64,000 nt of DNA from Ascidiella aspersa (taxonomy: Eukaryota): contig OZ004609.1 in the NCBI GenBank assembly GCA_963924565.1, forward strand, positions 24,118,001-24,182,000. The letters are read 5' to 3'. The notes under the pieces were generated by a model. The model ran no database searches and was not told the DNA's origin. It worked only from the letters and a program-made list of their open reading frames with translations. This document shows, one piece after another, positions 342 through 34,400 of this stretch. How positions within the stretch are numbered: position 1 is the first letter of the stretch; each line of letters starts with the position of its first letter. Made by a program: the position numbers and the translations under genes.

Positions 342-3300
342 GTAATGTAGACTCCATGAGCTGGATGAACTACGCCTGGAAGTATGACGGCTTAAAAAAG
401 CGCAAAGCCGGCGACTTCTACAAAAACTTCAAATTCACTTTTTCCCGTGAAGAGCTCCTGATCCTTCGCCATCAGCCTGACAAGGTTTGTTTTAAAATGC
501 TGCTGCACCAATACTGTTTACTCCATGTTGAACCTGGTGATAATAATTTCAGTATAGTTGTTCATTGTGATACCTTTGTACGGACTGAACGGAAAAAGTA
601 CTATATTATTGCTTTAACTTAAGTGGTTGAAACAAGTAATTGCTATAGATTTCTGTAGACGTAAATTGCTATATATTTCTACATAAAGTCGAAAGCGTAG
701 AGATTTCCCATAGAATTTTTTACTGGTACATACGTTACAAGATACTAACGCGATTGTTTGAATCGGATTGTTTAGACCAGTGGTTGTTAACCTTTTTCAT
801 TGCTGCACCCCTTTTAAATCACCAACCAATTCTCGTACTCCCTTCTAAAATTGCTTAAATAACAAAACCATCGTAATTTTATTTATACACAAGTAACTAA
901 TAACTCAATAAAGCAATACCGAAATGTGAGTTAGTTTTACATTTAATTGAACAAAGAACTAAATTACAGTAATACATTTTCCGTGTCTGACTTAACATTC
1001 CCATACCTCTTGGGGGTGCATGTACCCCTGGTTTAGACTGTGAATTTCAGTATCTTCCTAGCGTTTCGATCTTGAAGAAAATTTTCAAACAATGAACAAC
1101 GTAAACGAGGCTTGCCTTTTTTAGCTATTTAAGCAGGCCTACAAAGAGGCCAACGATGAGGTTTTTGAGTTTGTGCCGCCTTCCAAGTCGGCTCCTCCAG
1201 ACTACCTGGGCGGATACGGATATGAAGATGAAGGTTACGGAAAAGCCGGGTACGGTGAATACGATGACGAGGAAGAGTTGGAGGACGACGACGAACAATA
1301 CGGAGGATACCAGCAGGGCCCAGCTAAGAGGCGCAAAACAGAAGTGAAAGCCAGAGAGGTCGTGTTTGACATTAACACCAAGAAAACGCCCTACAAGAAG
1401 GTACGTTTTTTACGTAATAAAGCAATTTACTTGGGTACACTAGTCACTATGCATGGATCTGTAATGCAGCTTGAGGATAAATTACAAAGGCAAAAAGGTC
1501 GAGTATATTGACATCATCTTTATTGAGACGTTTCGATACGAGCTTGTATCACTGACACTGATGCAATTTATTATAAACAATTTACATAAATAAAATTAAA
1601 CGTTTACCAATTACGCGGTAATGTTGTTGTATGGTAGTACTAGAAGGTAGTTTGTCGTTAGCCCTCACGTTCGCAACTTCAATATAGATGTATTTGCACT
1701 CGGGTTATTCTGCCGCTGCAACAGGTTTAAATTTAAGTTTGCAGTTGGTGTAATGACATTTTAATATTTAAACCCAGGGCGACATCGTTGAACTGCAGAC
1801 CAGCCTGACGAACGTTGGAAAACTGCCAGCAAAGATCGAGGCCAATTTCGAGCCGGGTGGTGGAAATCTTACTGTCTATGTTACTGACCCGCAGGGTTAC
1901 GTTAAGGTATAATTCCAATCTGCAATAACACACATTGCTACTCCTTGGTGGTATAACTTTTATAATGATTGGTGAACGAAGTGCAATTGCGGTGTTTGTG
2001 AGAAGGTGACTTGTTAATAATGTTTTTTTGCCACTCGCCCGCATCGCATATTGCCGATTTTGCGAGTGCCCTTCCCGTGGGAACGAAACTAAAGACTATT
2101 GTGCCTGCGCATGTCCCGAGCAATTAAGCCCGGGACCGGTACTGGTCCGCGGGGAGTTGGTTACCGGTCCGTAGCAGGGTTGTTAGAATTTTGTTTAAAC
2201 ACGAACTGTACGTAAAAACCTGGTAAAAAGTAAAAAATAATTAAATGTATTTTCATATTTAAACCACATTTACCTTCGTTTTAATATAGCCTACTACTCC
2301 ATGGTTGATTGGTATGATTAAAAAAACACAATTAGCATCAAGCTCTCGTGAGGTTCAAAACAACTAGTGTGCTGTGGCCATATGAGTTACATAGCACGTT
2401 CACACCATCATTATTGCATATTTTTATTGCAAAATCTAACTTCTAGAACTTACAATATATCGAAGAATGGGCTAAAATATCATGTGTTTTATTTAAAATA
2501 TCATGCAGGTTATTTTAAGTGTGCTCACCTTAAAGTGCAATAGAATTTCATGCAAACAATGTTTATAAACTATTTCCCATAATGAAATAATTTATTATTT
2601 TGATATTTAGGCAGGAAAGGTTTCGATAATACGTATGTATAATTATTAGTTTTAGCCTCTATAATTTTAGACTCTATAAAAATGACAAAAAAGTCAAAAA
2701 GCCTAATGATTTTTCTAACATTAACCACGTTAAAAATGATTTATTTTTGTCAAAAAAAAACATTCTGTCAAGCCTTGCACGTATGTCTATCCTACACTTT
2801 TCAGTTCTCGGTCTGTGGTTCGTACTTTTTTTATATTGCCATTCATTTTTTTCGTTTTTGTATTACGTTAGCTTACTATTGAAAGTGTCGCGTAGGGCCT
2901 GGTCAAATAAGATCATACATTATTATATGTTATACAAAAGTGTCACTTCTTTTGAAAGAATGCTTTAAATATCCCTATTTTGACAACTGGTAGGAATGTA
3001 GGAATTGATAATAATGATATACCAGTGTAATTTAAGAAAAAACGTAAAGGCCTAAAAGTTTTATTGATATGAGCAGCGGGCTGGGTTAAATTGCTTGGCG
3101 GGCCGGATGCCGCCCGCGGGTTTCAGTAAGATAAGAATTCCTAAATGGGAGCATCTCTTTGCAGCGAAACAAGCATAAGATAGCATTGAAAGTTGTAATA
3201 AATTTCCTTTCCTGAGACAAAATTTTAGTTTTCGGCCGGTCCGCAGTGCCATAAAGGTTGCTGACCCCTGCTCTAAATGACAAACGCCTTTATTGTGCAG

Positions 3301-6300
3301 ACGGTAAAGCCTGTGGCCCAGGTAATCGATTCTCCCACTCGCAACTACGCCATTCTCGGCAAGCCTGGCAGTCGCGACTACGCCGAATCTTACAGCGAGT
3401 CTGTCCCTCTGTTGCAATCTTCCTATCCCATGTTCAACAAGGTCGGAACCTACAAAGTGAAGGCCGTGTACCAGAGTGGCGGGGTGCAGATGGCCTCCAG
3501 TAAGTCTAAAAACAAGTATTAGCTAACGAAAAAACATCCGCTAAGCTGTTTTCGTGTTGGGCAAGGTGCATTAAACACATTACTCGTCTTCAGCGTCTTT
3601 CCTTCTAGTTATCTCGACTTTGAGTTTGTAAAACGCGGCCTAAACGTTTGTAAACTTTCCCTCGTGTATTTTAGTCACACATCTACCTGTGCGCGATGTC
3701 CTACAAAATATTAGTTTTTATTTGTATTACGTAATCTGTTTTTATAGAGTACTCGACCATTACGATTGAAGAGGAAGACGAAGAAGATGAAGCGGCCAAA
3801 TACGAGGTAAGATTTCGTTCGCACATAATAACCCACCCGAGGTGGGATATTATGAAAACCGAATCATAAAGATCGTGACATTTATGCACGATTTTGTCGT
3901 TAAAACAGCCCGATTTGACAGGCTCGACAAATTGAGTGTACGTCCTGAGAAGGAGCTGCATTCCTTTCGTTTTCAGGTGGCAAAAGCGGCAAGTCTGGAG
4001 ACGTCGGCTTCGTACGGCCAGCAGAGCGCCCCAGTTAACTACTGGAAGAAGTTGGCGAAAAAAACCTCCGAGAAAAAGGCTGAGCGCGTCCAAATGATGC
4101 TCCTTCTGCTCAAAGGATTCGCAAAGGACGCGATGGAGGTCAGCGGTGATCGTGGCGCTTCCGGCGGCCGCAAAGTGAAGCTGAAGACCGGAGCCATTTC
4201 GCCGCAGAAGCTGCTTGCTGATACCGACGATCTGCTTAACTACTATCACAACAACGTGAGTCTAGTGCCGGCGCGAGTTTTTTCGAAGTTGCCATTGCTC
4301 GGACGTGAAGGTTGCCTGTATCAGACGAAGGTTAACAAATCGGGTTGTTTAAATCGCCACGAGTTTTTTATTTTCGCACCTTGCTTTTTTGGTTGGATTT
4401 TCGACATGCCTGCCCTCCTACTGAGTCCGGCGAGTTAGTTATTTACACCCAACTATATAGGCCGCGTACGAACTAGTAATTTCCACCACTATAGGTAGAA
4501 CGCTTGTATCTTGCAGTGTAGGCCTTCAACAGGGTTGTAATGTTTGTCAGCACAAAGCTTTTGCTATGAAGTTAACTAGTGTTTTTACAGACAACTTAAA
4601 AAAATAAGAGGGCACACTGAAGCATTGCGGTAGTTTGACGCAGTATGCTAACCATTAAGGGAGGGGCTTTAACGAGATTTTGCAAACCATTATTATTTCG
4701 AACAAATTTTGAATGATTTGCGAGGGTACAACGCTCCCGGGTATATTGCGAGGCCACAACGAAATCACAAAACACAACGTGTCCCGAACAAAAACATGCC
4801 GCCAACGCCAACCGAGTAAATCTAACGTAAAACCTATCCGCTTTAGCCCGGCGTCGACCCGCTCAACTACAATAAGTTGGTGAATGCCAGGAGCCAGTTG
4901 TACGCCAAAGCAAAGAAAGTGCCCAAGGCTGATGGGGAATACGCTCAGCTGGTGGCCGATCTGGTGCGCTTGAAAGAAAACAAGACCGGAATGGTCCAGC
5001 GCGCTATCGATGATTGGGAAAAATTGCTCAGCACACGTAAGACATTGCTTTTGTCGGCTCAAACGATTAACCGACGTTTGGACTTCGACTATAGGTGGCT
5101 CTAGAGATTGTCTGTTGTAGTAGTTTTTTTAATCTGAAACCCCTTTTGATTCCTTAAAATACCAATTAGAATCCGTTCAAAATCCTCCAAAATCAAATTC
5201 GTTTGGTGCCAAATAACAGAGTAGGAAAATTAGTGATTATTTCGCAAAGTTTTTATATACGTCAATTTCAAGAATTATATTTTGTATAAAGTTGATTGTC
5301 GTTAGCTAGGAACAACAACCTCTAAGTTATTTTCGAAAATTGCCAAAACGTTTCGCAGCACATGTAAGAATATATCTAAGCACACTGATATGTTGTGGCG
5401 CACAGTTTAGGAATCACTGCTTCCTACAACCTTAACAAAATGCAAAGCACAAACCCGAGAGTGGTGGGCCAACGTTGATCTACCTTGATTGGCGGACAGC
5501 TTGGGCTTTACCGCTGTGAGAATCGACATGTGCTAAGTTTACTAACACAATGAGCCCTGTTTATACCAACAGCGGAACCCTACGAGTCACCGCCGGCAAA
5601 ACCGGACAGGAAGAAACTGCAGAGCCGCTTTGAGAAACTCTTCTGGTTTAAACCTACGGAGAAGTTCGAGGTGGACAACGAGGCGTCCGGACTCGGTTTA
5701 TCCAGGTCACTAAAACTAAAAAAAACGCGTTTGGTAAAAAATGTTTACTTCGCATTAAACTTCCGCCTCTTATTAGTTCTTTTTAAATGACAATCAATGG
5801 GTTTAAAATCATCGTCGGCTTATTGCAACTAACCGTGATCTAGTTGCGATCATGAATTTAACCTTTGCAGTGGCCTATTGCCTTTAACCAGCGTTTAACC
5901 TCCCACCCACAGTATAAAATAACAATACGATAAAAAATAACTTCCGTTTAGCAGACCGGCGTCGAAACGTTCGTAATCGCTTCCCCGCCATTTCCTCAGT
6001 GAGCTAACCTGTCTGCGCGGCATTTGTCACGTCTATTGCGATTTTTACATTTGTCACGTCCATTACGGATTTGCTGTTTAGTAAACACGACAGTTAAGCG
6101 TTCAACACAACAATAAAAGTTTTCCAAATTGTTTTCGTTTCAACAGACCTTTCAATAACTTCGATGGCGATCACAAGGCCAAGGCGACCTACTTCATTGA
6201 CGAACTGCAAGATCTGGAAGATGAAACCGACGATCTGGACGCGGTTCTTGACTACGCTGAAGCGCGACAGAAGAGCTTTGAGGTCAATCCGTCTTTGTAC

Positions 6301-9300
6301 AAGTGGGCCATCGAGTGCTACGTCGTCCATAGCCCCCTGGCTAAAAGCTACCACATCACGTAAGTGTGTTTCAGCTTTTCGGTGACGGGTGTCCGCTGAT
6401 CCCGAAGGCAAGTAAACTACTTTTCGAAGACGCACGAAGTATAGAGGCGTAAGCGTACAGAACAAAGACAGTAAACACTATAGCCTGTCTTACATTCTAA
6501 AGTAATGAAGCACGCTCCTGAGAAAGCTCTTCAACGTAACAATTCGTCTACCGTGCCACGTGTTTTTCATATCAACCAAAAAAACAAAAAGCAAACGAGA
6601 GTTATAAGAACTTACTTTATCGTGAAATTTGCGTCGAGTTATCATCTATTCCCATTTTCGCAGCTATCCAGAGCCTAAGCCGATGGCGGAGGAAATGTTT
6701 TCCGCGGCCGCCATGATCGAGACAAAACGCAGCGGAAAACCGGCAGAGAACTGGATGAACTATTGGCGCTGCGACGCAGATTTCAACTTTCACCACAGGT
6801 TTGAACAATAGCCAGCAGGTTATGTCGAACTCCCAGTTGTTTAGCCTAATATGTTATTATTTTTAGCGTATTGTACAGAGACGCGATATTAGCTGATACA
6901 GTCACGTGGACGCCGTTTTTTAATATTATTTTCTATATGCAAAGTTTTTCACCTATATGTTAATATTGCTAAACCCTAGTAATTTCAATTTTCCTGACAT
7001 GTTATTGCAATGAATGCATTCGGCATTTTAAGACCGGCACAATATACTTAATACTTATACATGAATTCTGCACTGCAGGCATTGGCACACCGTTTATTCG
7101 AGATATTCGTTCTCCCAGGCCTTGGCCAAGAGACAGGGCGAGTTGTTTCTCTACATGCACTCGCAAATGCTGGCTAGATACGATGCCGAGCGTGAATCCT
7201 GGGGATTAAAACCCGTAAAGGTAAATTGTTTTGTTATTCGTATCGTTCTCGTTACCGCTTTGATACCTTACTGCGCTATAAATTGGATTAAAGAGCCACC
7301 ATTCAATAGTTTTCAAACAAAATATGTTTCACATTAACTGCACAGCGGCTCAAGATTTACTGGTAATCTTCCACAGGCTTTCGGATACAACGAGACCCCG
7401 CGCGGTTTTAACGCTGGGTTTGAGTTTCACAAAGACCATGGTTGGTATTTGCCTAGAGAAGATTACAAGCCTTGGCCAGAAGATTCCAAAGACACTCAGG
7501 AGCGTTTCGAAAATGAGCTTCTCAAATTGTACGAGAACAAGTCGAGCGAGAACTAGTAAGTAATATACAAAAAGGCATAAGGCCATAAATTGTCTCAACC
7601 CCAGCACTATTTGTCTTGTGATTTTGTGAATGTTAGCTTTTTTAACTTATATATTTTTATTGGTTCAGCAATGATGGTAGACCCATTGACGCCAACGATG
7701 CAGGATTTCTCATGGAACCATCAAACTATAGATACTACGATTTTTTCGGTGGCTTTCATAACGCAGGACACATGGCCTTTTGCGCTGGTTTACCAGAACA
7801 TGTAAGGTATTGTAGATTAATACAGATGCGAGTAGTTGTCAATCCTTGGTAAAAGTGCATATCAGATTCTCGACTAGCGGTAAATGCGGAGCTTAATTTG
7901 ACTTTTTTATCCAATTAAACCAAACCCTCTTCAACGAACTTTTGCAAAGAAGTCTTAATAGGGTGAACTTTCAAAAGGAAGTGAGCGTATTTCTGTACTT
8001 TGCGGTTAAGAAAATTGATTTAGTATTGGGATGAACCCTCCGTATAGGATGTTTATCTCCCACACTTTAAATCCATTCGATCGCCATTGGCTAAGACCCG
8101 TCCATTTCGCAGTATACCACCTACATGGGGTCGTCGGAATGCGCTGTTCGCGATCCGATCTTCTTCCGCTGGCACAAGAGAGTCGACAATGTAGCGGACA
8201 ATTATTTCGCGTCTAAGTTAACCGAAATGGAAAATGAAAACCCCGGCGTGATAATTGAGCCCACCGACGTGCTCGTTCAGCCTGGCACCGATGCCCCTGA
8301 TGGATTTGACAAGTAAGTTTCTCGTTTTGCGATTGTAAAAGTAATGAATGGCGGTCAAAAAAATTGTAAAGCAGCGAACTCGTTGCTTTAGTGTTGGCTA
8401 AGGCAAACAAACGCGAAACGTTCTAAACTTTCGGTTGTTTGTTTTCACAGATACGACGAGGACGAAATATATTTTAAGCTTCTATATGTTTTACGTTTCG
8501 TTCTCAGCGTAAACACTGCGCAATTAGGAAATAAAAATAGCGTATTTTAAAACTAGCTTTTTTCGTAATTACACAAAGTAAATCTATTATACCAGATCAA
8601 CGTAATTTACTAGTCACCGGGTGTCCCAACGCTAAATACTTTCATGAATACTTTATAGGCAAGTTTATTGATATCCAGCACAAGGTTATGACATTCTCTG
8701 TAAACTGCAGGTACTGGAAATGAAATATAGACAAACTCTCCAAACTTTGTTTTCACTGTGCCTTGCTGCATCAATAAGGCCCTAAACACAGTACGCGGTC
8801 GTTAATTTTCCAGATTCTCTAATGGCAAGTGGACGAAAAAGAATTTTCCTCAAAACGAAATTAAAACCGACCTGAAGAAAGCAACATTGATGTACGAATG
8901 GGATAACAAGCTCACCCACGAGCCTTTCAGCTTTCACTTCCGTATTCGCAGAAGCCCGGGCACTAAAGGTTCGCACGTCATCTGATTTTTTGTCCAAAAG
9001 AAAATTAAAACTATACGAGGCAACAAATTATTTAACATTTTTACCGTATTATTTTTACCGTAACCATCCAAATATTTGGTTTTATCTGTGCTTTGCAGGC
9101 ACATTAAACCTCACCGTCCGCGTTTTCATCTGTCAGGAGCGTCACGTCTTGAACCGAAAGAGGTGGATCGAAATGGACAAATTTGTTCACCGGTAACTAT
9201 GTCAGCAGCTTCTTTTTAAACGAGCGTCACAAGAGTTAAACTGTTTTGTGTTTTTTATAATGCTGCGGCTCATCGTCATCCCTAATACCATTTGTGCTTA

Positions 9301-12300
9301 TTGTTTTGGTACAGTGTCTGAAAAATGCTACAATGTGCTAATGTTTAAGAAACGTGTGCCTGAATATATGCTGAGTGTTGTAAAGCTTATCAAACGTTCA
9401 CTTGCATTTGCTTGCAGCATGCCGGACAAGGTGAACCACTGCGTGCTTAAGCGTCTAGACATCAACTCCTCCGTTATCAAGCGCAAATTCGAAAACCTGG
9501 ATGAACAGGAGAGTAAGTTTTGTGCAACTGTGGCGGGCAACTGCGAATGCGGCTGGCCCTACGAGATGATGCTTCCCCGTGGGACTAAGGTGAGAATTAC
9601 CTTCTGTTCTGTTGGTCATCATAACAGATAAATCAGCTGTTTGAACTTAAAGGGTGGGTGGGGGTTCGGACCCCCCCCCCCTTTTCGTAAGTGACATTAT
9701 CGTGTTTTGTTCGTTTTTGTCATAGTTACTAATTGGGTCACGCGTCTTAAGCTAATGCGAAACTAAAATCACGCCTTTCGTTATTCGTTCGGGTTGGCTA
9801 ATCAGCAAGTGTGTGTTCGACAATTAATAATATAAATCAAGCGGTTTCCGCTTTTTTCTCTTTGAAAACGTCTAGTTAGACGGTGCTATGTTTCTCGCTG
9901 TTTGTTGTCTACGTTAAAAATATCAGATGTTGGTGTAAGACTGGGGTCGGCAACCTACTGTGATTCATCGGCCCGTCGCCTCTTTGACAAACTATACACG
10001 AGTTCATTACAAATACTTTTTGACTATTTTAACTACGTAAATGCGAAAAAATTGCGCTTCGCGCGAATGATCTTACTAAGTCCGGTTTGTTAACGTTTTG
10101 ATGCTGTATTTTGAACTAGATCAGCGCTTCTTTACCGTTGCGCCGTGGAAAGCTGCCAAGTGCGTCGCGGACAAACCGAACACGTATTCAAAAATATTTT
10201 ACATGTATATTTTTTAACATTTTTTATTTTCGGCAATGTAATAAAAACTTAAAAATAAATGAAATAAAATAAATGCCAGTTATATTAAAATAAAAATCGC
10301 GCTCGCTTCGCTCGCCAGCTGTGCCCTCACTTAAAACGGTTATCAAACGTTGAACTAGATTAACTAACTATTAAAGTTATACCGTTTCTTCGAAGTAGTT
10401 TTATATGTCGCGCACATATTTCACGGTCTTGGTTTAGTTTTTCGCCTGAAGTTAACGATTGCACACTAAGCGGTTTCGCAGTTGGCGCCTGGCAGGATTG
10501 TCGATAACGCACGTGTTCGCTTTTGCTGGACGTTAATTGGCTGTTTCGGATGATTTTTTTTCTTGTTATGACGTCATTACCATCGCTATTTTATGACGTC
10601 ATATCCGTCACTATTTTATGACGTCATTAACGTCAGACGAAAAAACAACGGGAAATTCCCTAAGTTGAAAATTCGGAACCCCCCCTTTTTGAATTTCTGG
10701 ATACGCCCCTGCACACCCTTGTGGGTTTTGCGTTTCAGGCAGGCGAGAAATGGTGCGTGGCGGTGTTCGTAAGCAACAACGACATCGACAATATTAAGAT
10801 GAGGACCAAGTGCGGCAGCATGAGCTACTGTGGAACGCGTGACGAGAACTACCCGGATTCAAGGTTCATGGGATTCCCGTTTGCCACCCCCATTTCTATC
10901 AAGGGAACAAAGGCAAGACGTCTAACTTGGAGCTCCAATTCTAATTGTTTCGCGTTTAACCTAAATTCTGAAAAGCTTGCTTTACTTGGTAGTGTTTGCA
11001 CGCGAGAAAAGCTTCTCAAAGCAGTAGCCATGTTTTCCTTTCAGAAATGATTTAGTTGTTGAACAACGTTCGCTCGTGTTGTAAAAAAATATAACGGACT
11101 AGTTATTTCGAGTGTTTTTCCATCAACAGGGTTTTGATAGAATAGTAATGTTAACCCAAGGATGCTTGTTAAAGGTGACCATCACAAAAGCGATGGAGGA
11201 GATGAGTAACTTCAGCATGGCGCCGTTTACGATCTACAACAATTTGGCTCCGGAGGAAGCTGTATTCAAACCGGAAGAACCTGTCGATGTGTGGAAGCCC
11301 AGTTCTGTCGTGCCAAATGTGGAAGATATCGACTACAGGTAACTGGACATTCGAGTCTTTTGTTGTAAATCATCGCCAAAAATCTATCTTTCTGAAATAT
11401 AACTTTAGATGTTGAAGTGGGCGAAATGCTTTTATATACAAACTTTGTTAATGTCGTTTAAATAAACAAGAGATCAGTGGTATACTCGGAAAGCGACTAT
11501 GTAAGTCTTCGCCCATAATCCGATTAGTTTACTAATTATAGGAGTAAAACGTTTTCTTGTTATGTTAATGACTCGACTGGGACTTGGGCAACCGATCATT
11601 TGAAATGGGACTTACGTTACGTTTGTTTGCAAAAATACTTGACGTGGACTTAGGTTATTGAAGGCTATCCAAACCGACCATTGTCCATTTAAGGCCGAGC
11701 AGATTGACTGGCCGTTTCCGCGTGCTTCTGGATGACCAGGACTTCAGCAAAATGGGCGTTGACCGGGTCAAGTTGAGACTTAAGGGGCGCGGCGAAAAGC
11801 AGACATACACGATCCATGACATGTACTTGGGAACGAGAGACGGCAACTCGCTCAGCGTTGATCCGAAGAGCATCGTGAGCGTGACTTACAAGAATAACAC
11901 CAGCATGGAAGTGCCACCCGACGGCGTATTTACCGACGAGATTGTCCTGCCGTGAGTCTGCCGTGTATTTTTTGACAGCTGGTAGTGCTGTTGCATTTTG
12001 ACTAAATAGTCTTGTATAGATCAGGGGTGGGCAATTATTTTTAGCCGCGGGCCGCATGAGAAACCTAAAATATTGTGGCGGGCCAGGTCAAATATAGGAT
12101 CTAAAATACATACAATATGACGTCATACTCTGACGGTGTAAAACAAATAATCAACCAATGTGTTATTACGTTTGGAGTTGTGCGAAAATGTGCAATTTAA
12201 GTCGGATTTAAAGAAGGTCACGAAACGTCGCACGAAGCGCGAAAAATGTGCGACTATGTTTATTTGAAAATGCAAACTTCAATTTAGATTTAGATGGTAC

Positions 12301-13634
12301 GGGAAGCATTGAGCACCGACTAAAAATGTATATTGCTTGATATATTAGCGTTTATTAAGTTGTGGGGCGCGTTGACCCAAAACTTAAGATTAAAATACCG
12401 AAAAATTTCGTACGAAAAACTTTTACCTATATTTTTTTTCTTCCTTTTCAAAACTTTAAGTTACCGATGTGTTACAAAGTTTAACAAACTTAACCTAATA
12501 TTTATATATATTTTAAATATCAGGCTAAGTTTGTTAAACTTTCGTTGGAGAGAGTGCCACTGAGCAGAGGACGCTATTTTTTCGTAAAGATGCAAAAAAA
12601 TCGCGTGAAACACACGAGAAAGACAAGAGATTCGCGCAAAGCGCGAAAAGAATTTCCGTTTTAGCATTTAGAACAGGCTAAAAATCAAATTCGGCGGGGT
12701 CTTGACAAGATCTGTCAACATGCCCTGGTTTCCGCTTAGCCTATGTATTTTATTGAAAATAAGCCGCGAGTGGTTCTTAACCAGGGGTCCGCAAAACGTT
12801 TTCAGGGGGTCCGCAAAAACTTCTAAATATACCTTTATTGAATTAATTAACGCTGGGAAACATGCTTAATCACAATATTGGTAAGTGATAAAATCACATT
12901 AAGTGTGACGTAACACTTCCATTGTGATGTAACACAAATAGATTGTAAAATGGAAGACAACATTACAGTAGTTCACAACTTCACATGTACTGGATTTTAG
13001 TTTATCGCAAAGATGACATGCGTCTAGCATTGTCAAAACCACAACCATTTTAAGACTTGCTTCGGAGATGCAGCAGCAGAAATCACATTAAAATAAACCT
13101 GACATAAATTATTTTGGTGTTGTCTATTACTAAGGTGCGCTAGGCATATATAGGCGACTGAATAATTAAAAAGCACTAAACGCAGATATTACACCAGAAA
13201 AATGTAAGGGGTCCGCGACTATTTGACAGCATTAAAAAGGGGCCACGTGTAAAAAAAGGTTGAGAACCACTGTGATAGACACTTCCGCCCAAGATAGTAA
13301 GATGGTGTTTCTTTATGGTTTTTATTGTGTATTTCCAAGATAACATTTACAAATCATTTTCGCAATTCAGCTTAAATTAGCTATGTACTACTTACTAATT
13401 CGCTTATTTCTGCCCTGCAGTATCAAGCCCACTGCCGGCACCGACTTTTTTGTCACTTTCACTCTCGACCAGCCAGGCTGCTACGTGAAGAGCAAGATTA
13501 ATCGCGTCAACAGCTACCGAATTCCGCCAAGTTATGATGTGGGCGCCGGCACGCCCCCAACTAACTGGGACGGGATAGATCAGATCCGAAGCACGAGGAG
13601 CCTCTACTGTATCGAGAAGATGGTGGAGTGCTGA
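342..13634 (+). CDS. Multidomain arthropod-type hemocyanin/prophenoloxidase-like type-3 copper protein (5' end upstream of window)
   Basis: Phase-consistent exons 342-484, 1125-1400, 1778-1906, 3301-3499, 3748-3806, 3977-4255, 4847-5036, 5573-5705, 6147-6359, 6664-6798, 7079-7220, 7377-7555, 7669-7801, 8113-8312, 8814-8968, 9099-9192, 9418-9589, 10739-10912, 11175-11338, 11694-11951, 13421-13634 (about 1210 codons, no internal stop). Motifs: CuA FHHRHWH...[10 protein letters not shown]; CuB GFHNAGH...[11 protein letters not shown]; C-domain WIEMDKF, CECGWP..MMLPRG and YPD.RFMGFPF. Confidence 0.92.
778..1030. mobile_element. hAT-type MITE in phenoloxidase intron
   Basis: cagtggtt...cccctg termini; perfect 8-bp TSD gtttagac (770-777 and 1031-1038). 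Confidence 0.75.
6791..8175 (+). other. Binuclear copper site exons (CuA and CuB) of the phenoloxidase-like gene
   Basis: All six expected His ligands are present: HHRHWH and YMH (CuA); HNAGH and FFRWH (CuB). Confidence 0.92.
9650..10711. mobile_element. Decayed or nested non-autonomous DNA elements in phenoloxidase intron
   Basis: gggggttcgga near the left end and ttcggaaccccc..ggatacgcccctg at the right end. The internal segment from about 9940 resembles the element at 29790-30364 (shared atactttttgactattttaactacgtaa). Confidence 0.55.
12022..13272. mobile_element. Cluster of hAT-type MITE fragments in last phenoloxidase intron
   Basis: Left end caggggtgggcaa..gcgggccgc at 12022; a second element agtggttcttaacc...ggttgagaaccactg at about 12769-13272. 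Confidence 0.6.
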
Positions 13635-14569: not shown

Positions 14570-17500
14570 TCAGTCCGCTGTTTTCGGCTGTTCGTTTTCA
14601 GATGGATAACTAAAGCGCGGCAGGTGTGGCAGATTAGCGTTTTCCAGCAACTTGTTTACGTCATCGATCTCGTTACGCACGAGTGCGATCAACTCTGGTG
14701 TGAAGGGCTCGAAATCCCAGGTGGACTTTTTGCGCTTGTGCTTTCCATCGATCTCCTGACCGAGGCAGTGCAATCTATCCTGGAAGTTCCTCTTACTGAT
14801 ATTCAGATCGGGCAGGAAATCGACCATTCGCCTAATCTGACCTATCGGGTTTTGTACCAGGTCTTTGTAATGGACGATCAGCAGCGGGCGATTGCTGGCC
14901 AGCAGCGTTTTTATTAGTGTCTTCCACAGGTTTATTCGAGTGGATGCATATTGAACGAAACCTGAAACACAACGAAATACAAATTTTTTGCAGTTTACCG
15001 TCTGAAATTCAAAATTGGTTATATTCCAATAAATATGAAAGTATGTTTAATCCTGCGCGTGTTGTGTAATGCTGTAGGCGTCCCAAACTCGCATATGTTT
15101 AACTTGGTTGTATTTCGCAAAAAGAATATGTTAACCTTCTCTGATTTGCCTCCTGGTCGCTATCCCGGTGTGATTTCCTGTAGCTTTTCGATTAAAATCG
15201 GCCAACAGCGCGTCGTAGGGGTTCCTGATGATGAGTATGCTCCGGTCGGAGGTTGGATGTTTGTCCCGAAGGTGATCTTTTACAACAGCTGTCTGCTGAT
15301 GCTCGATCAAACCTTCTCCGATAAATCCTGCAGATTGATAGCATCGGACTGTGTTATGTAGGCATATTTTATTTAATGCAAAGTGTAATTAACTGCAAAT
15401 ACTTGAAACAAACCTAAAAAAAAAGCCTTACAGCAAATTATTTTAACTTTTTATAATGAGAGTGTGTCCGTAAAACGTGACATTCGCAATTATTAGTATC
15501 AGGGATAGAATTTCGTCATTTCGCCAGTTTCAGAATTTTTAAAAGTTCAGCCAGTCGGCCTATGCTCAACCAAAATGAGGATAACCATATTTAGTATAGA
15601 TTATTAAAAAAAATCCCGGATTTTTTACCCTAATACTATATATGTAAAATATTAATATTAAACGCAAGTAATGTATTTCTGATATCATTTTGTGCAACCT
15701 GGTATAAAAGCAACGGTGCTACATAATTCGACCAACACTTGTAATGAAATATAAATCAATTTTGCAGCCTATACGTGACGAAGCATTCGGTGATATTAAA
15801 ACAATTTTGCCATGTTATTACCGCATCGTTCCCAGCTTAGTGCAAACAGTCCGCAGACTAAATATAAAGTGTTTGATTAAAGTGGATCTAAAAAGAAGAT
15901 AATATATACCTGATCTTATCAGGGCCCGATCTTTGTAGTTACTCCCTGTAAATTGTCCCGTGGCCTTCTCCAGCAAATATCGGGCCCAAGTATTGCCGGA
16001 CCCTGGAAAAGACGCCAAGATGGTAATTTTACGGTGTTTGCTCGGAGGAAGAAGCCGCACCAAGCTGCATCTTTTATCCTCCACGAGGGTCCGATACATC
16101 TTCCCTCCTCTCTTGTCCACGCAACTTATAGATTGCTTCCAGTTAAATCTAAATTTTAGTAGATGGTCAGTTGTATAAGATGGGTTTTTAACGTATTTTA
16201 GTCACCTTCTTTTTCTAATGTAGCCCGACTAAACTATATTACATTCGATAAGATTGTGGAAAGTTGATTTTTCTTGTTTCCGGTGGTTAAAGTAGCCTAT
16301 AATGATTTTCTTACCGGAACAGTGAAACAATTTTACCAGGACGTCTAAAACAAGGAACCATAGAAACCTTGGGTTATCGTTCTAGGTCGCACATAAATAA
16401 TTCGCAATTAAAATTTTAGTTTAATCAGGGAGTCGAACCGTTTGAATTTTCCGGTTCAGGTTTGGTTTGGGTTCAAGGATTTGTTCGGAATCCGGTTCAG
16501 TTCCGGTTTTGGTTCGTTGCAATTTAAAAGTTCCGGTTCAGCTCCGGTTCGACAATCGTTATTTCAAAACCGGTTCATAAAGTTCCGGTTCGGATACAAT
16601 ATTAGTTGCGTTAAATCTAAATATGTGGGTCAATAAACGTAGAGACTAATTTTAGAATTTTTTTTTTCATTTAATCTAAGTTAAGTGACGTGTTAAAAAA
16701 ACAGCAACGCATAATCGAAATATCTGAAAAATAAAAAGTCAACGTTTTATTTAAATTCATATTTTTTTCATAAAATTTCGAACATGGCATAACTTGACTC
16801 TGTAAAATAGAAGTTGTGACGTCATGCTGGAGCGAACCGCGTTTGTTTAGAGGTTCGGGTTCGGTTCAGGTACTTTCAAAATATTCGGTTCAGTTCCGGT
16901 TCGGCTCCTTAAACTCTTACATAAAACGGTTCTGGTTCGGTTACGGTTCGGAAATAATTGACCGAAAACCGGTTCATAAAGTTCCGGTTCGGTTACGGTT
17001 CGACTCCCTGGTTTAAATACATTCAAGGAGATGGCGGGATGGCCTGTTGAAAAAGGGACATATTTTGCTAAAAAAAATAACATCTGTGTATACCAATACG
17101 GCGTATCTGCAAAACAATCTGAGCGGAAATACACAAATCTTTTACCGGAACGCCTTTCTGACTTACCTTCACCACGGCTTGTTTCGCTAAAATTGCCAAA
17201 AAACAGTTTTTGATATTGCAAAAGTTTATCGCAACATTGGAAGGGACATTACAGAACATTAACTTACTTGTCGTCCATTGAGCCACACATACATTCACCC
17301 ATGATGTAAAGCGCTATGTGCAGGTCAGCGTTCTGACATTGGTGATAGCATTCGGTGGCCGTAGCTGCGTTAAACGAGATGAACTTGCTATCTTCGGGTG
17401 GGCGCATGTAACATCCGACCGCGCGCGACTGAACGAAGTCGCTTGAAAATGGCCCTGCGAGAGTAGATTGTTTAGTCTTCTAGGAGTTTTTCGCCATGCA

Positions 17501-21377: not shown

Positions 21378-24300
21378 TTATGCAATGTCATCATAGGCAG
21401 GGGGAGCCTGGCGAGTGGTTTCCTTCAGCTGCTCCGACGTTGATTCAGCAGCATTTTGAAGGTGCTGGTAGGGAATGTGGCTGGCGGTCGTAACAACTGC
21501 ACATTGAAGAGAATAACGCATAATCTAAAATAGCTTTAAGCGTTGTGTCTCACCAACTTTATGTAACAGGCCATTTTGTTTAATAATGGCGTAATTTTCC
21601 ATTCCACTTAATGTAAATTTAATATCTACTCATTAAAAATTTTCCTGCAAATTAAAGATAACAAACAATGGCCATACCTTTGTCCTGTCCTCAACGACCA
21701 TGACGTCAATAAAGAGTTACTAAGATTACGCAGCTGACAAAGTCATATACCAAGACATATTTATATCTTAACCCAGTCCCCGATTGCGCATCGTTAAGAC
21801 CAGTGGTTGGCAAACTTTTGGCAACTTGGTTGGTAAAAACTTGAACATTTTATAATGACAACTGTTTTCAAGTACCTATTATAATATATTTAAGAAAAGG
21901 GCGATTTAAAAAATGTCGTTAAACTCTCGATCTTATGTTCATGTTTAAAAGACACAGTGAATTCGTGCGAAGCGTTATGTATTAATGGTGAAAAATGTTG
22001 ACACTCCTGCATATACAAAGTGCTTTTTGAATGAAAAGATTCCCTTGAAACGCAAACCTACGGGGCGTATGAAGAAAATCGGGCAAGTAAAATTAGGCAA
22101 TATATATATATATATAACTAAGAAATGGCCGAGTACCCAGTTTGCAAAGCAGCTGGCGGCCGCGGACCATATTCGACCCTTATTTAGACTCATTACTCTG
22201 ATAGATATTTTCATATTTTTTACAAAATATTTTTAATTTAAAAAAAATTACTTTTACTGCTATAACTTAGACTTTTCGTGCTTTAAAGTCATTAAGGGCA
22301 TTAAGTAATGTTTTTAAAGGTCTTACCCCAAAAGGACGTATGCCAATTCTCAATATATCTATACAGTACTTAAATTTACCCACCAAACCCGCGTGAATAA
22401 TACAAAAGCAATAGTTCACCTGGTATGGCGAAGCGTCTGGTGACTGTTGTCCGTACGCCAGTCAGCACTCGTCCATTGATGCGTCTATTGCGAACGCGCA
22501 CCCATACACGGAGCACGGCCAACAAAACCACAATCAGTGCGATCGGCAACACAATAAAAGTTGTTAAGGCCCTGCATTTAAAATCACACTGTTCAAAAAA
22601 ACTGAAGATCTGCCTGGTCACAGTCAGGACTAACGAATGAAGTATAAGTGCTTACCCTGGGTCGGGATAGTTTAGGTCGTCTGATTCATTGTTCGCATCA
22701 TCCCAATGTTCGCTGTAATCTTCGTTGACATAGTCCCCCCATTCTGTTGTCGTTGTAGTAGATCTATACCCAATAATATAAATTGTTTATTACATATGTT
22801 ATATAAGGACACGCGATAAGCCATGTGATTAATCAAGCTGTTGGCCGCGATTTACTTTTTAGAAAGTAATTTAAAGCGAAAAATGTTTTTAAATTGATTT
22901 GAACTTACTGCAAGGCTTATCGCAAAACGTTAAACTACACGATAAAGCTCTCTGCATTTACATACTGGGTTGTAGTGGTGGATGTGCAGCAAACCAAGTT
23001 GCCAAAGAAACCGTTACAGCAGACGTCCTGGCCCACACTGCAAGTTATGCCGCCGCAAACCTTTGGTGTGTAGGGCGATGCACAATAATCGTTGCTCGCC
23101 ACGCAATAAAGGATGTTCAATGCGCGGCAGCATATCTGGAATTCGCCACAAGTTTCATACCCGCAGGTTTTCCCTGGATCCTCAGTTGTCGTGGTTGTCC
23201 TACATAAATGATAAAAATGCCTAATAAACGGACTTTCAAAATTGTACTCATTTCTTTTGGTATAGCAATGTGAATCATATAGCACTGCATAAGTGTTTCG
23301 AAATGTAGGCCTATCATGTTTTGGGGCGCCCTAAAAGTGTTGTGCTTGTCTTGCAAAAAATCCTTACTATAAAGGTAGACTGATTTTGGTTAATTCTCCC
23401 CAAAGCTCTCGTTGTACTATTGGTATGCGTGGCGTTATATTCTACATTCGGTACCTTTAAAAATATACACAGTTATGCACGCATGGGCCAATTCACCAAA
23501 AAATAAGAACGGTCAATTTCGGCGATGAACACTCTGCAGGAAAAATCTGTGTCATACGGTGGTATAAAAGAGGCCACCTTACAGGGGACGTGATGTTCAT
23601 TTATGCAACAAATGCAAAAATGTGCACGCAAAATATTACCAGGGTTAGAGTTAAAGTCAGAAAATTTAGAGTTAGAAGAGCTAGAGGTAAAAGAGAAAAG
23701 GGGAAACGAATTGGAAAAATAGTTGGTTGAAAAGTCGTAGGAAGAATCGAAGGAAGAGTTGGAGGAATAGGTGGAGGAAGAATTGGAAAGAGAGTTGGTC
23801 GAAGAGTTGCTAGAAGAGTTGAAAGAAAAGTTGAGTTGAAACACAAATGGGAAGAAGAGTTGAGAGAAGAGTTGGACGAAAAGTTGGAAGAACATTAGAG
23901 GAGTTAGTAGGGAAGAATTATAATAAAGTGTTAAAGTTGAGGAGTGAAAGGTGTAGTTAGTTTGCCTTAGCACACAATAGTGCTTTTGATGCTTACGGCG
24001 TAATTGTTTTTTTTTTCTTAAAAAAATCCTACCAAGATACGCGAAGTCAATGTCTCCTAAAATAAACTTTGTTCACAAAGGTCCTGTTTGCACAATTTCC
24101 AATTAAATGTACAAGCCCATTGCAACTATAATGAATCAGGATCAACAACTTCTTTGTTTTAGTAAAATAGTGACTTTAAAGCAAGTTTCATAGCCCCGGG
24201 CGGGAACTTTTAGATTCACACGAAAAACTAAAAAATTAGTGCATCGTAACGACCACTATTATTTCTTGTGTGACCAGCGACAAGCAGAAATAGTCATACG

Positions 24301-31468: not shown

Positions 31469-34400
31469 CTAGGCCGAGTCAGACATTGGTTTGGGGCCGA
31501 CATAGGGAGGATTTTGATGATCTAAGCCTGGAGTTTTACCGCTGCCATTTGCCGTCGTTTTTTGTCCGGTCTTTCCAGTCTGCTGTAATGCTATTTGGTT
31601 TCTTTTGTCATTGGAGCCCAAGTCCGTTTGCTTTGTTCTCCACGCCGACCCACTTTTGATTAGTCGGCTGATCAGGTTATCGATAAAGTTTGAGTAGAGG
31701 ATCGGGTTGAACGCACTGTTGATGGGCAGAAGTACGATTGCTGATATTGCGTACGAAATACTGTCTATCTGCACTCCGCCGAAGTTTAAAAACACCATAA
31801 TCGATAAGGGAATCCAACAACAGAAATCCGTGGCGATCAAGCGGAGTACCTTGCGTTGAAGTTCTATTGCAAACAAACAAACAAGTCGTTATGTGTACGG
31901 CAGGTTAGAACGCTGAAAACATATCCTTGTTTCGCCAAACTATGGCCATACTCACTTGAATTTCGACGTGCGACACTTTTTGCTCTCGCCTGGCCGTTTT
32001 GACCCCTGCGTGCCGCAATCATAATGCCAACATAGGTAAGTGCAACAAATAAAAAGGCCACAAAGTTAAAGATGGAAATGGGCAAGGAGAAAGGCCACGA
32101 TCGGTCGCTGCGTGTCACAAAGAAGTTAGGGATGCAGACACTGTTGGCGCTATAGTACCTGCAAAAAGTTTGGATTTTTCAATGTAGTGTTTAAGGCAGC
32201 AAATACATTTATTTTGACTCCATTTGGCAGGCACAACCTGCGGTTTTTTTTTACCACTTAAGGTTGCATGGGGCATGACCCCCCCCCCAAAAAAAAAAAA
32301 CATTTAAACATTTTAAAAACAAATCAGCGCAAAGGCAGAAAATATATGCGAGTTTTAAACTAAATAAAATACCTATATAACTTTGTAACCGAACGGATTT
32401 AATAACTTCACGACAATTAAAATAACTTCGCGCTTTTTGAGAAGCTACTCCAGGAAGTCATGACCACAACAAAAACAAAGAATAATCCATAATTATAATA
32501 CATATTTCATATTACAAGTAAGGCGCCTTATGGACAGCACAAAATTTAAAGAATTGTCAACCGTATGTCCTAACATTTTTTTACGCAAACAATTTACCCA
32601 AAATAGTGTTCTATCCCGAAAAAATCTTCCCCGGGGGCGTGTTGGTCCAAAAAGTCAACGAGCGCTTTCCACGACGCGACACGCGACAGCTCCTCGAGGT
32701 CGCGCGAAGTTAGCGTCGCAAAAACGGGTGAGTAGTTGACCAACGATTCTACAAAGTCTTTTGCGTCGGGAAAATCAACAACCAAGCTCCCAAACAACGG
32801 GTTGTTGCCATTTACTTTTGCCACGTCGACGAAGTAAGCTTGGAGTGTTATATTGGTTGGGAGAAGAGCGAGCAGCAACGATAGCATCCAGACCAGTAGA
32901 ATGAGGAAGACAATTGTTCCAGTTGAGGGGCTCGTCGAACTTTTAAACGGCTGAAACAGCAAAAATACACGCCCTTTAAAATGCACTTAACATTCACTGT
33001 TTTTTATATAACAATAGAACATACAGAAGAATCTCTCAGGATAATAAAAACAAATATCAGTAATATTCTTCATAATTGTCTTTAAGTTTCTCTAAGACTT
33101 ATCTATTCTTAAATGGAGTGTCTTAATCTAGAATATTCAACTGTTTTTTATAGTACACACATTGCAAAAATAATGTTAAGCTCATCCTTGAGGACCTTCG
33201 ACGTAAGAAAAAGAATCATGTAATTGAAAATTTCTTACCTTAGTTACTGAGTACAGACGACTAACAGTGAGCAAAACCATGTTCATCACCGACATTTCAC
33301 TTGAGAGAAATACCAGAACACCCATCGCTGTGCACGCATTGCTATTAAGCCATTCTAGAGATTTGGAGCAGTATACGTTGCTATAAACGGCTCCGACTAT
33401 ACCGAGCATTAAAAGGTAAACTCCCATCAGCAGGTCGGAAATAGCTAGATTAAGAACGATCATGTGATTGGCTCGTTTCGACGCGTTTCCTCGACGTTTG
33501 AACATCTTCGTGAGTTTCTTGCATTCGCCAAAAATTACAACCTTTTTAGGAAAAGTAACGATAGCTTCTTGAGCTCTCCAGGTAATATAAACTCCCTGAT
33601 CACTCTTTAACAAAACTGGATTAACCTTGAAATGGCCCAACAGTAGTCTGGCTTCATAAAACACATTATAACTTAAAATAATACATTGTTGAAGTGACTG
33701 CTCCATTTTGGCTATAATTACCGGACTGAAAGTCAAAATGTGCATTCTTGCAAAGTGAAATAACTTATTTGACCAGATGGCCTTATAATTATGTCCAACT
33801 CGTACTTGTCAGTCTTACAACTTGTAGTTGTTTTAAAGTGTCCTATATTGTCTAGAAATACAAAGTACATTTGACAATCTTTAATTATAATGACATGTAA
33901 AGTAACCGAAGTAGGCTACACTTACTGAATTTCCAAAGATGGCGAGCAGGGCCATGATCCACACAGCCGACCTCAGCATCCAATTGCCGATCAGTTCCTT
34001 TCTTGATGAAAGTACGTTTAGTCCTTCTGTAATTACGGTGCTTGGACATTCGTCACTCCAATCCTTGCAGTCGTGCACCCCGTCAAATAACTATTTTTAT
34101 AACAGTTCGAGTCTGGAGTTTTCTTTTTAACTCATTTCATTTTAATTTCTTGTTGCAATAAGGGCGACACTATGCCGATATTGCTGCCTTGTGCGCTTTA
34201 TTTAAAAGGTTGACTATTATCATAGGGTTAAAATAGAAATGTTGTATAATAGCTGTTTACAAATAAGGAGTAGTGCAACAACACAAAGAGTTTGTGTTTT
34301 AAGTGAAAGACGCTATTTCACCTTTAATTTTAAATTCTAACCGATTTACACTCTACTACATTGCAAAAAATTTACTTTGTAAATACAATATTTTTTCGAA

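What the first reader, a model, noticed from the sequence alone, without database searches (positions are those of the whole stretch)
342..13634. Candidate new system: protease-like + Ig-like + phenoloxidase + jelly-roll fusion, possibly a self-activating prophenoloxidase
Seen: one uninterrupted spliced frame of about 1210 codons. More than 420 aa precede the hemocyanin N-domain (which starts around the exons at 5573-6359), and about 170 aa follow the hemocyanin C-domain. Established: arthropod-type proPOs are about 650-700 aa and are activated in trans by serine-protease cascades. Inference: the flanking regions look like bacterial-type modules (see next findings). The protein may therefore carry its own activating metalloprotease and a surface- or glycan-anchoring domain, for example for tunic hardening, wound sealing or immunity.
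Basis: partly seen in the sequence, partly recalled or inferred. Interest (0 to 1): 0.9.

Follow-up and report, generated by a model that had tools for sequence, protein, structure and literature searches.

The report
Sea-squirt phenoloxidase fused to a metalloprotease
This sea-squirt gene appears to join a zinc protease to a copper phenoloxidase (the enzyme that darkens and hardens wounds) in one protein of about 1,500 residues, so the enzyme may carry its own activator; no RNA evidence could be obtained.

Summary
With canonical GT-AG introns plus two GC-AG introns, the window carries 21 exons (342-13634, + strand). They total 3,629 nt, about 1,210 codons, with no stop. 421 codons lie before exon 5573 and 212 lie after the last hemocyanin-C exon.

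The gene starts about 4.7 kb upstream of the window. The full model has 27 exons and 1,516 aa. The upstream exons carry an intact HExxHxxGxxH zinc site, and exon 342-484 carries the Met-turn.

The only other copy of each module in this genome is a paralogue on contig C6. It has the same module order, the same intron phase at every intron, and exon lengths that differ only by multiples of 3. An orthologue on public metagenome contigs repeats this from the N-terminus into the phenoloxidase. The phenoloxidase's first exon has no ATG. A real fusion gene is therefore likely (about 0.75), but I could obtain no RNA evidence.

The "bacterial-type", "Ig-like" and "jelly-roll" labels are not supported: only the zinc helix matches anything. 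Self-activation is an untested inference (about 0.3).

Verdict: a new variant of known kinds. Other notes of this scan cover the upstream metzincin on overlapping DNA.

The parts
342..484 (+). Exon 7 of 27. It holds the metzincin Met-turn (SMSWMNY) and the helix after it. It is the first exon inside the window; exons 1-6 lie upstream at L003:5304-5340, 5408-5558, 6111-6345, 7328-7507, 8696-8886 and 9404-9531, and the last of these carries HECGHCMGLKHPFEEG.
   Evidence: WMNYAWKYD is invariant in three loci. Exon 6 joins exon 7 in phase 1 through a GC-AG intron (AAG|GCGAGT), with a conserved Gly as the split codon. The zinc-motif exon matches Pfam M10, reprolysin and M43 models below threshold, E 4e-4 to 0.06.
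1137..1400 (+). Exon 8. An acidic, Gly/Tyr-rich low-complexity spacer (10 Tyr, 10 Gly and 22 Asp+Glu in 88 aa) with a KRRK motif, followed by the start of a beta-rich module.
   Evidence: The equivalent exons in the paralogue (177 nt) and the orthologue (204 nt) have the same phase 0 and lengths that differ by multiples of 3.
1778..3499 (+). Exons 9 (1778-1906) and 10 (3301-3499).
   Evidence: 47-63% identical to the paralogue and orthologue. The only family match is Pfam Big_3_5 at E 0.11. The fold was not established.
3748..5036 (+). Exons 11 (3748-3806, acidic), 12 (3977-4255) and 13 (4847-5036). A linker of about 175 aa that is probably helical and joins the protease half to the phenoloxidase half.
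   Evidence: Phases 1, 0 and 0 in all three loci, with lengths 59/50/59, 279/285/288 and 190/190/196 nt. 35% identical to the orthologue. Across 1.8 billion proteins, a stop-free 215-aa segment that contains exon 12 found only one hit, an exon-sized ORF from a metagenome. No Met is positionally conserved.
5573..6359 (+). Exons 14 (5573-5705) and 15 (6147-6359). By position, this is the N-terminal helical domain of the phenoloxidase.
   Evidence: Exon 14 and the whole stop-free stretch around it (5554-5787) hold no ATG. The exon 14/15 split codon is Arg in this gene and Lys in the paralogue. There is no Pfam or PDB sequence match, so the assignment as Hemocyanin_N rests on position only.
6664..8312 (+). 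Exons 16-20 (6664-6798, 7079-7220, 7377-7555, 7669-7801, 8113-8312). The copper domain, with all six histidines present: CuA in FNFHH, HWH and YMH; CuB in FHNAGH and RWH.
   Evidence: Pfam Hemocyanin_M at E 5.9e-10 and 4.4e-4. The nearest solved structures are arthropod prophenoloxidases 3WKY and 3HHS and hemocyanins. The histidines were read from the exon translations.
8814..10912 (+). Exons 21-24 (8814-8968, 9099-9192, 9418-9589, 10739-10912). The hemocyanin C-terminal Ig-like domain. Exon 24 ends at a GC donor (AAG|GCAAGA).
   Evidence: Pfam Hemocyanin_C at E 6.7e-4 and 2.5e-5, both below the 26.4-bit cut-off. Exon 24 is 174 nt, as in the paralogue, in phase 0.
11175..13634 (+). Exons 25 (11175-11338; an alternative acceptor lies at 11130), 26 (11694-11951) and 27 (13421-13634, with stop TGA at 13632-13634). 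A conserved C-terminal extension of about 210 aa that is predicted to be all-beta.
   Evidence: 35-40% identical to the paralogue, with invariant motifs TGRxRVLxDDQ, DxFVTF and RSLYCI. There is no Pfam, NCBIfam or PDB match. The AlphaFold model of exon 26 alone has pLDDT 48 and five strands. A gene on the opposite strand begins at about 14573.

Best explanation
One ascidian gene (27 exons, about 18.3 kb, 1,516 aa) has no evident signal peptide and encodes the following modules in order: an N-terminal beta-rich region; a divergent metzincin zinc-protease domain with intact HExxHxxGxxH and Met-turn; a Tyr/Gly/acid-rich spacer; a beta-rich module; an acidic and helical linker; an arthropod-type (beta-subclass) phenoloxidase with all six copper histidines; and an all-beta C-terminal domain of about 210 aa. 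The gene is ancient: the whole architecture is kept in a paralogue and in another species. Proposed mechanism (inferred, not shown): the protein is stored as a latent pro-enzyme in haemocytes. On release, the zinc-protease domain cuts the linkers, in cis or between molecules. This frees and activates the phenoloxidase, so that the protease stands in for, or acts alongside, the serine-protease cascade that arthropods use. My sub-probabilities are: single fused gene about 0.75; protease domain catalytically competent about 0.7; self-activation, given both, about 0.5.
For: Shown. (1) A continuous spliced frame runs from L003:5304 to window 13634 with no stop. (2) The genome holds exactly two copies of the metzincin exon, of Hemocyanin_M and of the C-terminal exon. 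They always occur together, in the same order and on the same strand, on C3 and C6. (3) The C6 paralogue was modelled independently. It gives 26 exons and 1,533 aa, the same intron phase at all 25 shared introns, and exon lengths that all differ by multiples of 3. Split-codon residues are conserved: W, G, G, R/K, R, G, R. (4) Metagenome contigs L009-L012 hold an orthologue from another species. It is 35-64% identical and closer to this copy than to C6. Its exons have the same order and phases from the N-terminus through the metzincin and linker into phenoloxidase exon 15. (5) The first phenoloxidase exon has no ATG, and no Met is conserved in the linker exons. (6) The zinc site and Met-turn are invariant in all three loci. 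(7) All six copper histidines are present, and PDB and Pfam place this domain with arthropod prophenoloxidases. (8) The paralogue's start codon is preceded by an in-frame stop, and its N-terminus is not hydrophobic. This fits the cytosolic beta subclass of type-3 copper proteins (PMC3658974). Inferred: proteolytic self-processing, and storage and release in haemocytes (general ascidian phenoloxidase biology, PMC5465252).
Against: The ascidian literature attributes phenoloxidase activation to serine proteases (PMC5465252, PMC11310991). From memory only, unchecked: the cloned Ciona phenoloxidase cDNAs encode about 780-800 aa, which would fit phenoloxidase plus C-terminal domain without the protease half. 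The protease domain reaches no family threshold, and only its zinc helix is recognisable. The cleavage sites are unknown. The 5' end of this copy is uncertain: exon 1 is a weak call.
Confidence: 0.4

Rival explanations
1. The fusion is real but it is a two-enzyme machine, not a self-activating zymogen. The protease cuts Tyr-rich precursor proteins or tunic proteins into peptides. The tethered phenoloxidase then hydroxylates and oxidises these peptides (tunichrome-like DOPA peptides, cross-linking). The protein's own Tyr/Gly-rich spacer may itself be a substrate or a cross-linking handle.
For: The gene-structure evidence is the same. The spacer exon has 10 Tyr in 88 aa, and its paralogue counterpart is also Tyr/Gly/acid-rich. 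The review PMC5465252 describes phenoloxidase substrates as tunichromes, probably fragments of DOPA-containing proteins stored in the same cells.
Against: Nothing here bears on substrate specificity. The orthologue's spacer has fewer Tyr. This rival does not exclude self-processing as well.
Confidence: 0.2
2. Two or three transcription units, or an internal promoter or trans-splice site. The phenoloxidase with its C-terminal domain would be made mainly as a separate protein of about 800 aa, and the metzincin gene would be a conserved upstream neighbour. The continuous frame would then reflect an occasional read-through isoform or an ancestral fusion.
For: I have no RNA data. From memory only: the published ascidian phenoloxidase cDNAs are about 780-800 aa, close to the 579 + 212 codons counted here for the phenoloxidase plus the C-terminal domain. 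Tunicates use operons and SL trans-splicing (general knowledge).
Against: Exon 14 has no ATG, and no Met in exons 11-14 is conserved across the three loci. No exon ends in a stop. Phase and length-modulo-3 are conserved through all linker exons in three loci that are 35-60% identical. There is no AATAAA between exons 13 and 14. Both genomic copies of each module remain adjacent after an old duplication.
Confidence: 0.2
3. The fusion is real but the metzincin-like region is not an active protease. It would be a structural pro-region, chaperone or metal-binding module that keeps the phenoloxidase latent until outside proteases, such as serine proteases, remove it.
For: Outside the zinc helix the domain resembles no known peptidase family. 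The distance from the third His to the Met-turn is unusually short, about 10 residues, against 15-27 in most of the bacterial M10-like ORFs compared. The literature supports activation by serine proteases (PMC5465252).
Against: The catalytic Glu, all three His, the Gly and the Met-turn Met are invariant in three loci that are otherwise only 50-60% identical in these exons. This argues for selection on catalysis.
Confidence: 0.12

Closest known systems
Arthropod prophenoloxidases and hemocyanins (Pfam Hemocyanin_N/M/C; e.g. PDB 3HHS Manduca sexta PPO, 3WKY shrimp proPO) and the ascidian 'arthropod-like' phenoloxidases (Ciona CinPO-1/-2, Botryllus HLP)
   Same: It has a Hemocyanin_M copper domain with six His, a Hemocyanin_C domain and no signal peptide. 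Its best PDB matches are arthropod prophenoloxidases. This genome has two genes of the kind, and two are described for Ciona (PMC9395347).
   Different: About 730 residues come before the phenoloxidase (metzincin, spacers, beta module, helical linker) and about 210 residues follow it. Arthropod prophenoloxidases are about 680-720 aa and are cut in trans by clip-domain serine proteases. The N-domain region here has no detectable sequence match.
Metzincin zinc endopeptidases, closest by motif to family M10 (matrixins and serralysin-like bacterial enzymes with HExGHxLGLKHPFE ... xMSY)
   Same: HExxHxxGxxH followed by Pro, a Met-turn (S/T)WMNY and a following helix, in a catalytic region of about 210 aa. 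The top sub-threshold Pfam matches include Peptidase_M10 and the Reprolysin families.
   Different: No family threshold is reached. Profile-profile comparison with 84 bacterial M10-like domains aligns only the zinc helix. The His-to-Met-turn spacing is short. There are no RTX repeats, no cysteine-switch propeptide and no signal peptide. The domain is split by introns and fused to a phenoloxidase.
Tuphoxin, the ascidian alpha-type tyrosinase with EGF and TSP1 domains (PMC9395347)
   Same: It is another ascidian haemocyte phenol oxidase that carries extra domains and is found as processed fragments of several sizes.
   Different: It belongs to a different copper-protein subclass (alpha, secreted), carries different accessory domains and has no protease domain.

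Membership tests
Arthropod-type hemocyanin/phenoloxidase superfamily (type-3 copper, beta subclass) | Hemocyanin_M copper domain scoring above the Pfam cut-off | tested here: met
   PF00372 scores 39.2 bits against a cut-off of 20.8 on 7065-7334 and 36.7 bits in the genome scan.
Arthropod-type hemocyanin/phenoloxidase superfamily (type-3 copper, beta subclass) | Six copper-binding histidines (CuA x3, CuB x3) | tested here: met
   Read in the exon translations of both paralogues: FHH/HWH/YMH and HNxGH/RWH.
Arthropod-type hemocyanin/phenoloxidase superfamily (type-3 copper, beta subclass) | Hemocyanin_C Ig-like domain and Hemocyanin_N helical domain | tested here: inconclusive
   Hemocyanin_C scores 24.2 and 19.5 bits, below the 26.4 cut-off, per exon. 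Hemocyanin_N has no match.
Arthropod-type hemocyanin/phenoloxidase superfamily (type-3 copper, beta subclass) | No signal peptide (cytosolic beta subclass, PMC3658974) | tested here: met
   The paralogue's ATG follows an in-frame stop, and its N-terminus (MFSAISNNPISG...) is not hydrophobic. No hydrophobic first exon was found for this copy, though its 5' exon is uncertain.
Arthropod-type hemocyanin/phenoloxidase superfamily (type-3 copper, beta subclass) | Phenol-oxidising activity after proteolytic activation | not testable with these tools
   Needs an enzyme assay.
Metzincin clan (MA(M)) zinc endopeptidases | Extended zinc motif HExxHxxGxxH | tested here: met
   HECGHCMGLKH, HELGHTLGLVH and HECGHNLGLKH in the three loci.
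Metzincin clan (MA(M)) zinc endopeptidases | Met-turn downstream of the third His | tested here: met
   An invariant WMNYAWKYD begins about 10 residues after HPFE(E/N)G. That it is the Met-turn is inferred from position and from the (S/T)xMxY pattern.
Metzincin clan (MA(M)) zinc endopeptidases | Membership of a named family (M10, M12, M43 and others) at the curated threshold | tested here: not met
   The best scores are 21.2 bits for Reprolysin_5 (cut-off 27) and 19 bits for M10 (cut-off 24). The NCBIfam archaemetzincin model scores 21.5 against 145. Only the zinc helix aligns. I therefore file it as a metzincin of unassigned family.
Metzincin clan (MA(M)) zinc endopeptidases | Metzincin fold: five-stranded sheet and three helices | not testable with these tools
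   The domain spans four exons, and the joined sequence was not to be folded.
Bacterial origin of the flanking modules (horizontal transfer) | Specific bacterial homologues beyond a generic motif | tested here: not met
   One search found none. The 94 hits cover only residues 22-42 of the zinc-motif exon. No other exon matches those loci. One hit in 301 genomes at E 0.005, for each of two profiles, is the chance level. Actinobacteria could not be sampled.
Accessory beta-sandwich of SGNH/GDSL hydrolases, or another jelly-roll or CBM-like domain (C-terminal extension) | Sequence or fold match to such a domain | tested here: inconclusive
   No Pfam, NCBIfam or PDB sequence match. The Atlas search was uninformative. 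The AlphaFold model of the largest exon has pLDDT 48 and is all-beta, too weak for a fold search.
Bacterial Ig-like domains (Big_3_5 and similar) | Pfam match | tested here: inconclusive
   E 0.11 and 13.5 bits against a cut-off of 35.5. The paralogue gives no match.

The most novel reading that the evidence does not exclude
Ascidians make their haemocyte prophenoloxidase as a single polypeptide of about 170 kDa that contains its own zinc-metalloprotease activator. This would be a one-molecule melanisation and cross-linking switch, older than an ancient gene duplication and shared between species. It would replace or bypass the clip-domain serine-protease cascade of arthropods.
Probability: 0.3. 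Interest if true: 0.8.

Novelty: new variant of a known kind. Interest (0 to 1): 0.62.

Why it matters
How ascidian prophenoloxidase is activated is unresolved. The field assumes, by analogy with arthropods, that a serine-protease cascade does it (PMC5465252, PMC11310991). A phenoloxidase permanently fused to a conserved, apparently catalytic metzincin gives a concrete and testable alternative, namely metal-dependent self-processing. It could also explain why ascidian phenoloxidases are reported in several sizes. It would be a rare case of an effector oxidase fused to its activating protease. It also adds three unnamed conserved modules to the tunicate protein repertoire: the N-terminal region, the beta module and the C-terminal domain. 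If the fusion is general, published ascidian phenoloxidase sequences and gene models may be truncated at the 5' end.

Tried and rejected

Protein collections: a stop-free 215-aa segment (3791-4435) that contains exon 12 found only P0001, an exon-sized ORF from metagenome DNA. All members of its cluster read on into the intron, so they are genomic and not spliced. The exon-13 segment found no candidate at all, so this species is not in those collections.

Domain naming: Pfam and NCBIfam, run exon by exon on both paralogues, named only the zinc helix and the hemocyanin exons. PDB profile searches with exon 5 and exon 26 gave chance hits only. Two ESM Atlas searches were uninformative. The AlphaFold model of exon 26 had pLDDT 48, so I ran no fold search.

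Bacterial affinity: a pattern scan with exon 5 found nothing. The scan with the zinc-motif exon found 94 bacterial M10/serralysin-like loci, but only the motif matches. Scans of 301 bacterial genomes stayed at the chance level.

Rejected readings: a 23-nt micro-exon across the window edge, which was an artefact of a model limited to GT donors and is replaced by a GC-AG intron. An arthropod-like Arg-Phe activation site at the exon 14/15 junction, because the N-domain cannot be aligned to arthropod prophenoloxidases.

Frame continuity was only counted inside scripts.


Full report
WHAT IS THERE. The window is G000:C3:24118001-24182000. It has eukaryotic, intron-rich DNA with about 39% G+C. Other notes of this scan call the genome an ascidian; I did not test that.

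Stop-free segments on the + strand between 300 and 13,634 include clear hemocyanin-type pieces. Pfam finds Hemocyanin_M on 7065-7334 (E 5.9e-10, above the cut-off) and on 8095-8313. It finds Hemocyanin_C on 9197-9628 and 10664-11047. The nearest solved structures for the copper exons are arthropod prophenoloxidases (3WKY, 3HHS) and hemocyanins. All six copper histidines are present.

GENE MODEL. I wrote a splice-aware dynamic programme that scores codon log-odds and donor and acceptor sites and checks split codons. I ran it on the 10 kb upstream (L003) plus the window.

- After refinement the model has 27 exons, 4,551 nt and 1,516 aa with no internal stop.
- It runs from L003:5304 to the TGA at window 13632-13634.
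- The 21 in-window exons total 3,629 nt, or 1,209.7 codons. There are 421 codons before exon 5573 and 212 after exon 10739-10912.

Two introns need GC-AG splicing: AAG|GCGAGT after L003:9531 and AAG|GCAAGA after window 10912. In both cases the GC donor restores the exon length and phase seen in the paralogue. As a control, the best model on the reverse complement scores 80 and on shuffles 13-20, against 402 on the forward strand. The codon table was trained on conserved pieces of the same loci, so this control is only indicative.

THE GENE BEGINS UPSTREAM, WITH A METZINCIN. Earlier notes of this scan pointed upstream. L003:9404-9531 encodes ...LLHYLVHECGHCMGLKHPFEEG. This is a full HExxHxxGxxH zinc site, and it gives sub-threshold matches to many metallopeptidase models, with M10 and reprolysin-like models best. 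The first in-window exon (342-484) follows in phase. It begins [15 protein letters not shown], which is a Met-turn pattern.

IS IT ONE GENE? Four lines of genomic evidence say yes.

1. The genome holds only two copies of the metzincin exon, of Hemocyanin_M and of the C-terminal exon. The second set lies on C6:3.277-3.298 Mb in the same order and on the same strand.
2. tblastx shows the two loci are collinear over their whole length, at 28-80% amino-acid identity. The C6 locus, modelled independently, gives 26 exons and 1,533 aa, and its stop is the top-scoring end of the model. All 25 shared introns have the same phase. Every exon-length difference is a multiple of 3. Split-codon residues are conserved.
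3. A stop-free 215-aa segment that contains linker exon 12 hit a single protein among 1.8 billion. That protein is an exon-sized ORF called on metagenome contigs. Fetching those contigs revealed an orthologue from another species. It is 35-64% identical and closer to this copy than to the C6 copy. It has the same exons, order and phases from the N-terminal region through the metzincin, spacer, beta module and linker into phenoloxidase exon 15, where the contigs end soon after. The architecture therefore predates both the duplication and a species split.
4. The first phenoloxidase exon (5573-5705) and its whole open stretch contain no ATG. No Met in exons 11-14 is positionally conserved, and no exon ends in a stop.

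What is missing is RNA. I put the fusion at about 0.75.

WHAT THE EXTRA MODULES ARE.

- N-terminal region, about 130-190 aa (exons 2-3): conserved, beta-rich by eye, no family match.
- Metzincin domain (exons 4-7, about 210 aa): the zinc ligands, the catalytic Glu, the Gly and the Met-turn are invariant in three loci, but no family threshold is met.
- Spacer (exon 8): 10 Tyr, 10 Gly and 22 Asp+Glu in 88 aa, plus KRRK.
- Beta module (exons 9-10): only a Big_3_5 match at E 0.11.
- Linker (exons 11-13): acidic, then probably helical.
- C-terminal extension, about 210 aa (exons 25-27): 35-40% conserved with the paralogue. It has no Pfam, NCBIfam or PDB match. An AlphaFold model of its largest exon is all-beta but unreliable, with pLDDT 48.

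The paralogue's start codon is preceded by an in-frame stop, and its N-terminus is not hydrophobic. This fits the cytosolic beta subclass of type-3 copper proteins (PMC3658974).

BACTERIAL AFFINITY. A scan of 185,579 species' genomes with the exon-5 profile found nothing. The zinc-motif exon found 94 loci, mostly proteobacterial M10/serralysin-like ORFs that share HExGHTLGLKHPFE. The match is confined to that helix. No other exon matches those loci. Profile-profile alignment against 84 of these domains aligns nothing else. HMM scans of 301 bacterial genomes, run separately with the exon-5 profile and the exon-26 profile, gave one hit each at E 0.005, which is the number expected by chance. The "bacterial-type" reading is therefore not supported in what I could search. 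Actinobacteria were not sampled.

MECHANISM. Shown: the architecture, its conservation, and intact catalytic signatures in both enzymes. Inferred: the protein is a latent precursor whose metzincin domain cuts the linkers, in cis or in trans, to release active phenoloxidase.

I considered three rivals.
- A tethered two-enzyme machine, in which the protease makes Tyr-rich peptide substrates for the oxidase.
- Separate transcripts or an internal start. From memory only, the published Ciona cDNAs are about 780-800 aa, which would match the phenoloxidase plus the C-terminal domain.
- An inactive, pro-region-like metzincin remnant.

The literature I could search attributes ascidian phenoloxidase activation to serine proteases and mentions no metalloprotease fusion.

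STEPS LEFT OUT. This is the main limit on naming the multi-exon domains. No N stretches were filled (L011 has 9 N).

VERDICT. The fusion is probably real, ancient and unreported in the literature I could reach. The module labels and the self-activation idea remain open. I class it as a new variant of known kinds (prophenoloxidase plus metzincin), with interest 0.62.

Noticed in passing
window 770-1010 (inside the intron between exons 342-484 and 1137-1400): A dispersed repeat of about 230 bp. The own-genome DNA search listed 40 or more copies on many contigs at 81-86% identity, so it looks like a SINE or MITE family.
   Followed up: no
L003:9532 (just upstream of the window), window 10913, and L010:9355: Three probable GC-AG introns in this gene family: AAG|GCGAGT, AAG|GCAAGA and GAG|GCAAGT. 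Each restores the exon length and phase seen in the other loci. This is a high share for one gene (2 of 26 introns in this copy).
   Followed up: partly
window 14573-16201, minus strand: A convergent neighbouring gene with sulfotransferase-like exons (Pfam Sulfotransfer_3 and Sulfotransfer_1 at E about 1e-3; motif [18 protein letters not shown]). Its 3' end faces the phenoloxidase gene's stop.
   Followed up: partly
window 31472-35851, minus strand: Exons of a rhodopsin-type GPCR (7tm_1) with an LDL-receptor class A module (E 4e-6). This architecture resembles a relaxin or LGR-type receptor.
   Followed up: partly
L004:1300-8840 (10-20 kb upstream of the window), + strand: The upstream neighbour is a long coiled-coil protein gene with many Glu/Lys/Gln-rich exons that ends near L004:8840. 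It sets the 5' limit for the fusion gene.
   Followed up: no
L009-L012 (metagenome contigs JGI24022J15233_10001527, Ga0210059_1004612, JGI24159J19872_10015826, JGI24021J15306_10020250): These public 'metagenome' contigs are intron-bearing animal DNA and carry an orthologue of this gene. Its exons have been called as stand-alone prokaryote-style ORFs (P0001-P0005) that read on into introns.
   Followed up: partly
window 22938-24072, minus strand: Two long open segments. One is Cys-rich with Thr runs (22938-23330) and the other is Ser/Asn/Phe-rich and low-complexity (23476-24072). The Cys-rich segment has no Pfam match. They may be a secreted mucin-like or tunic protein, or simply repeats.
   Followed up: no
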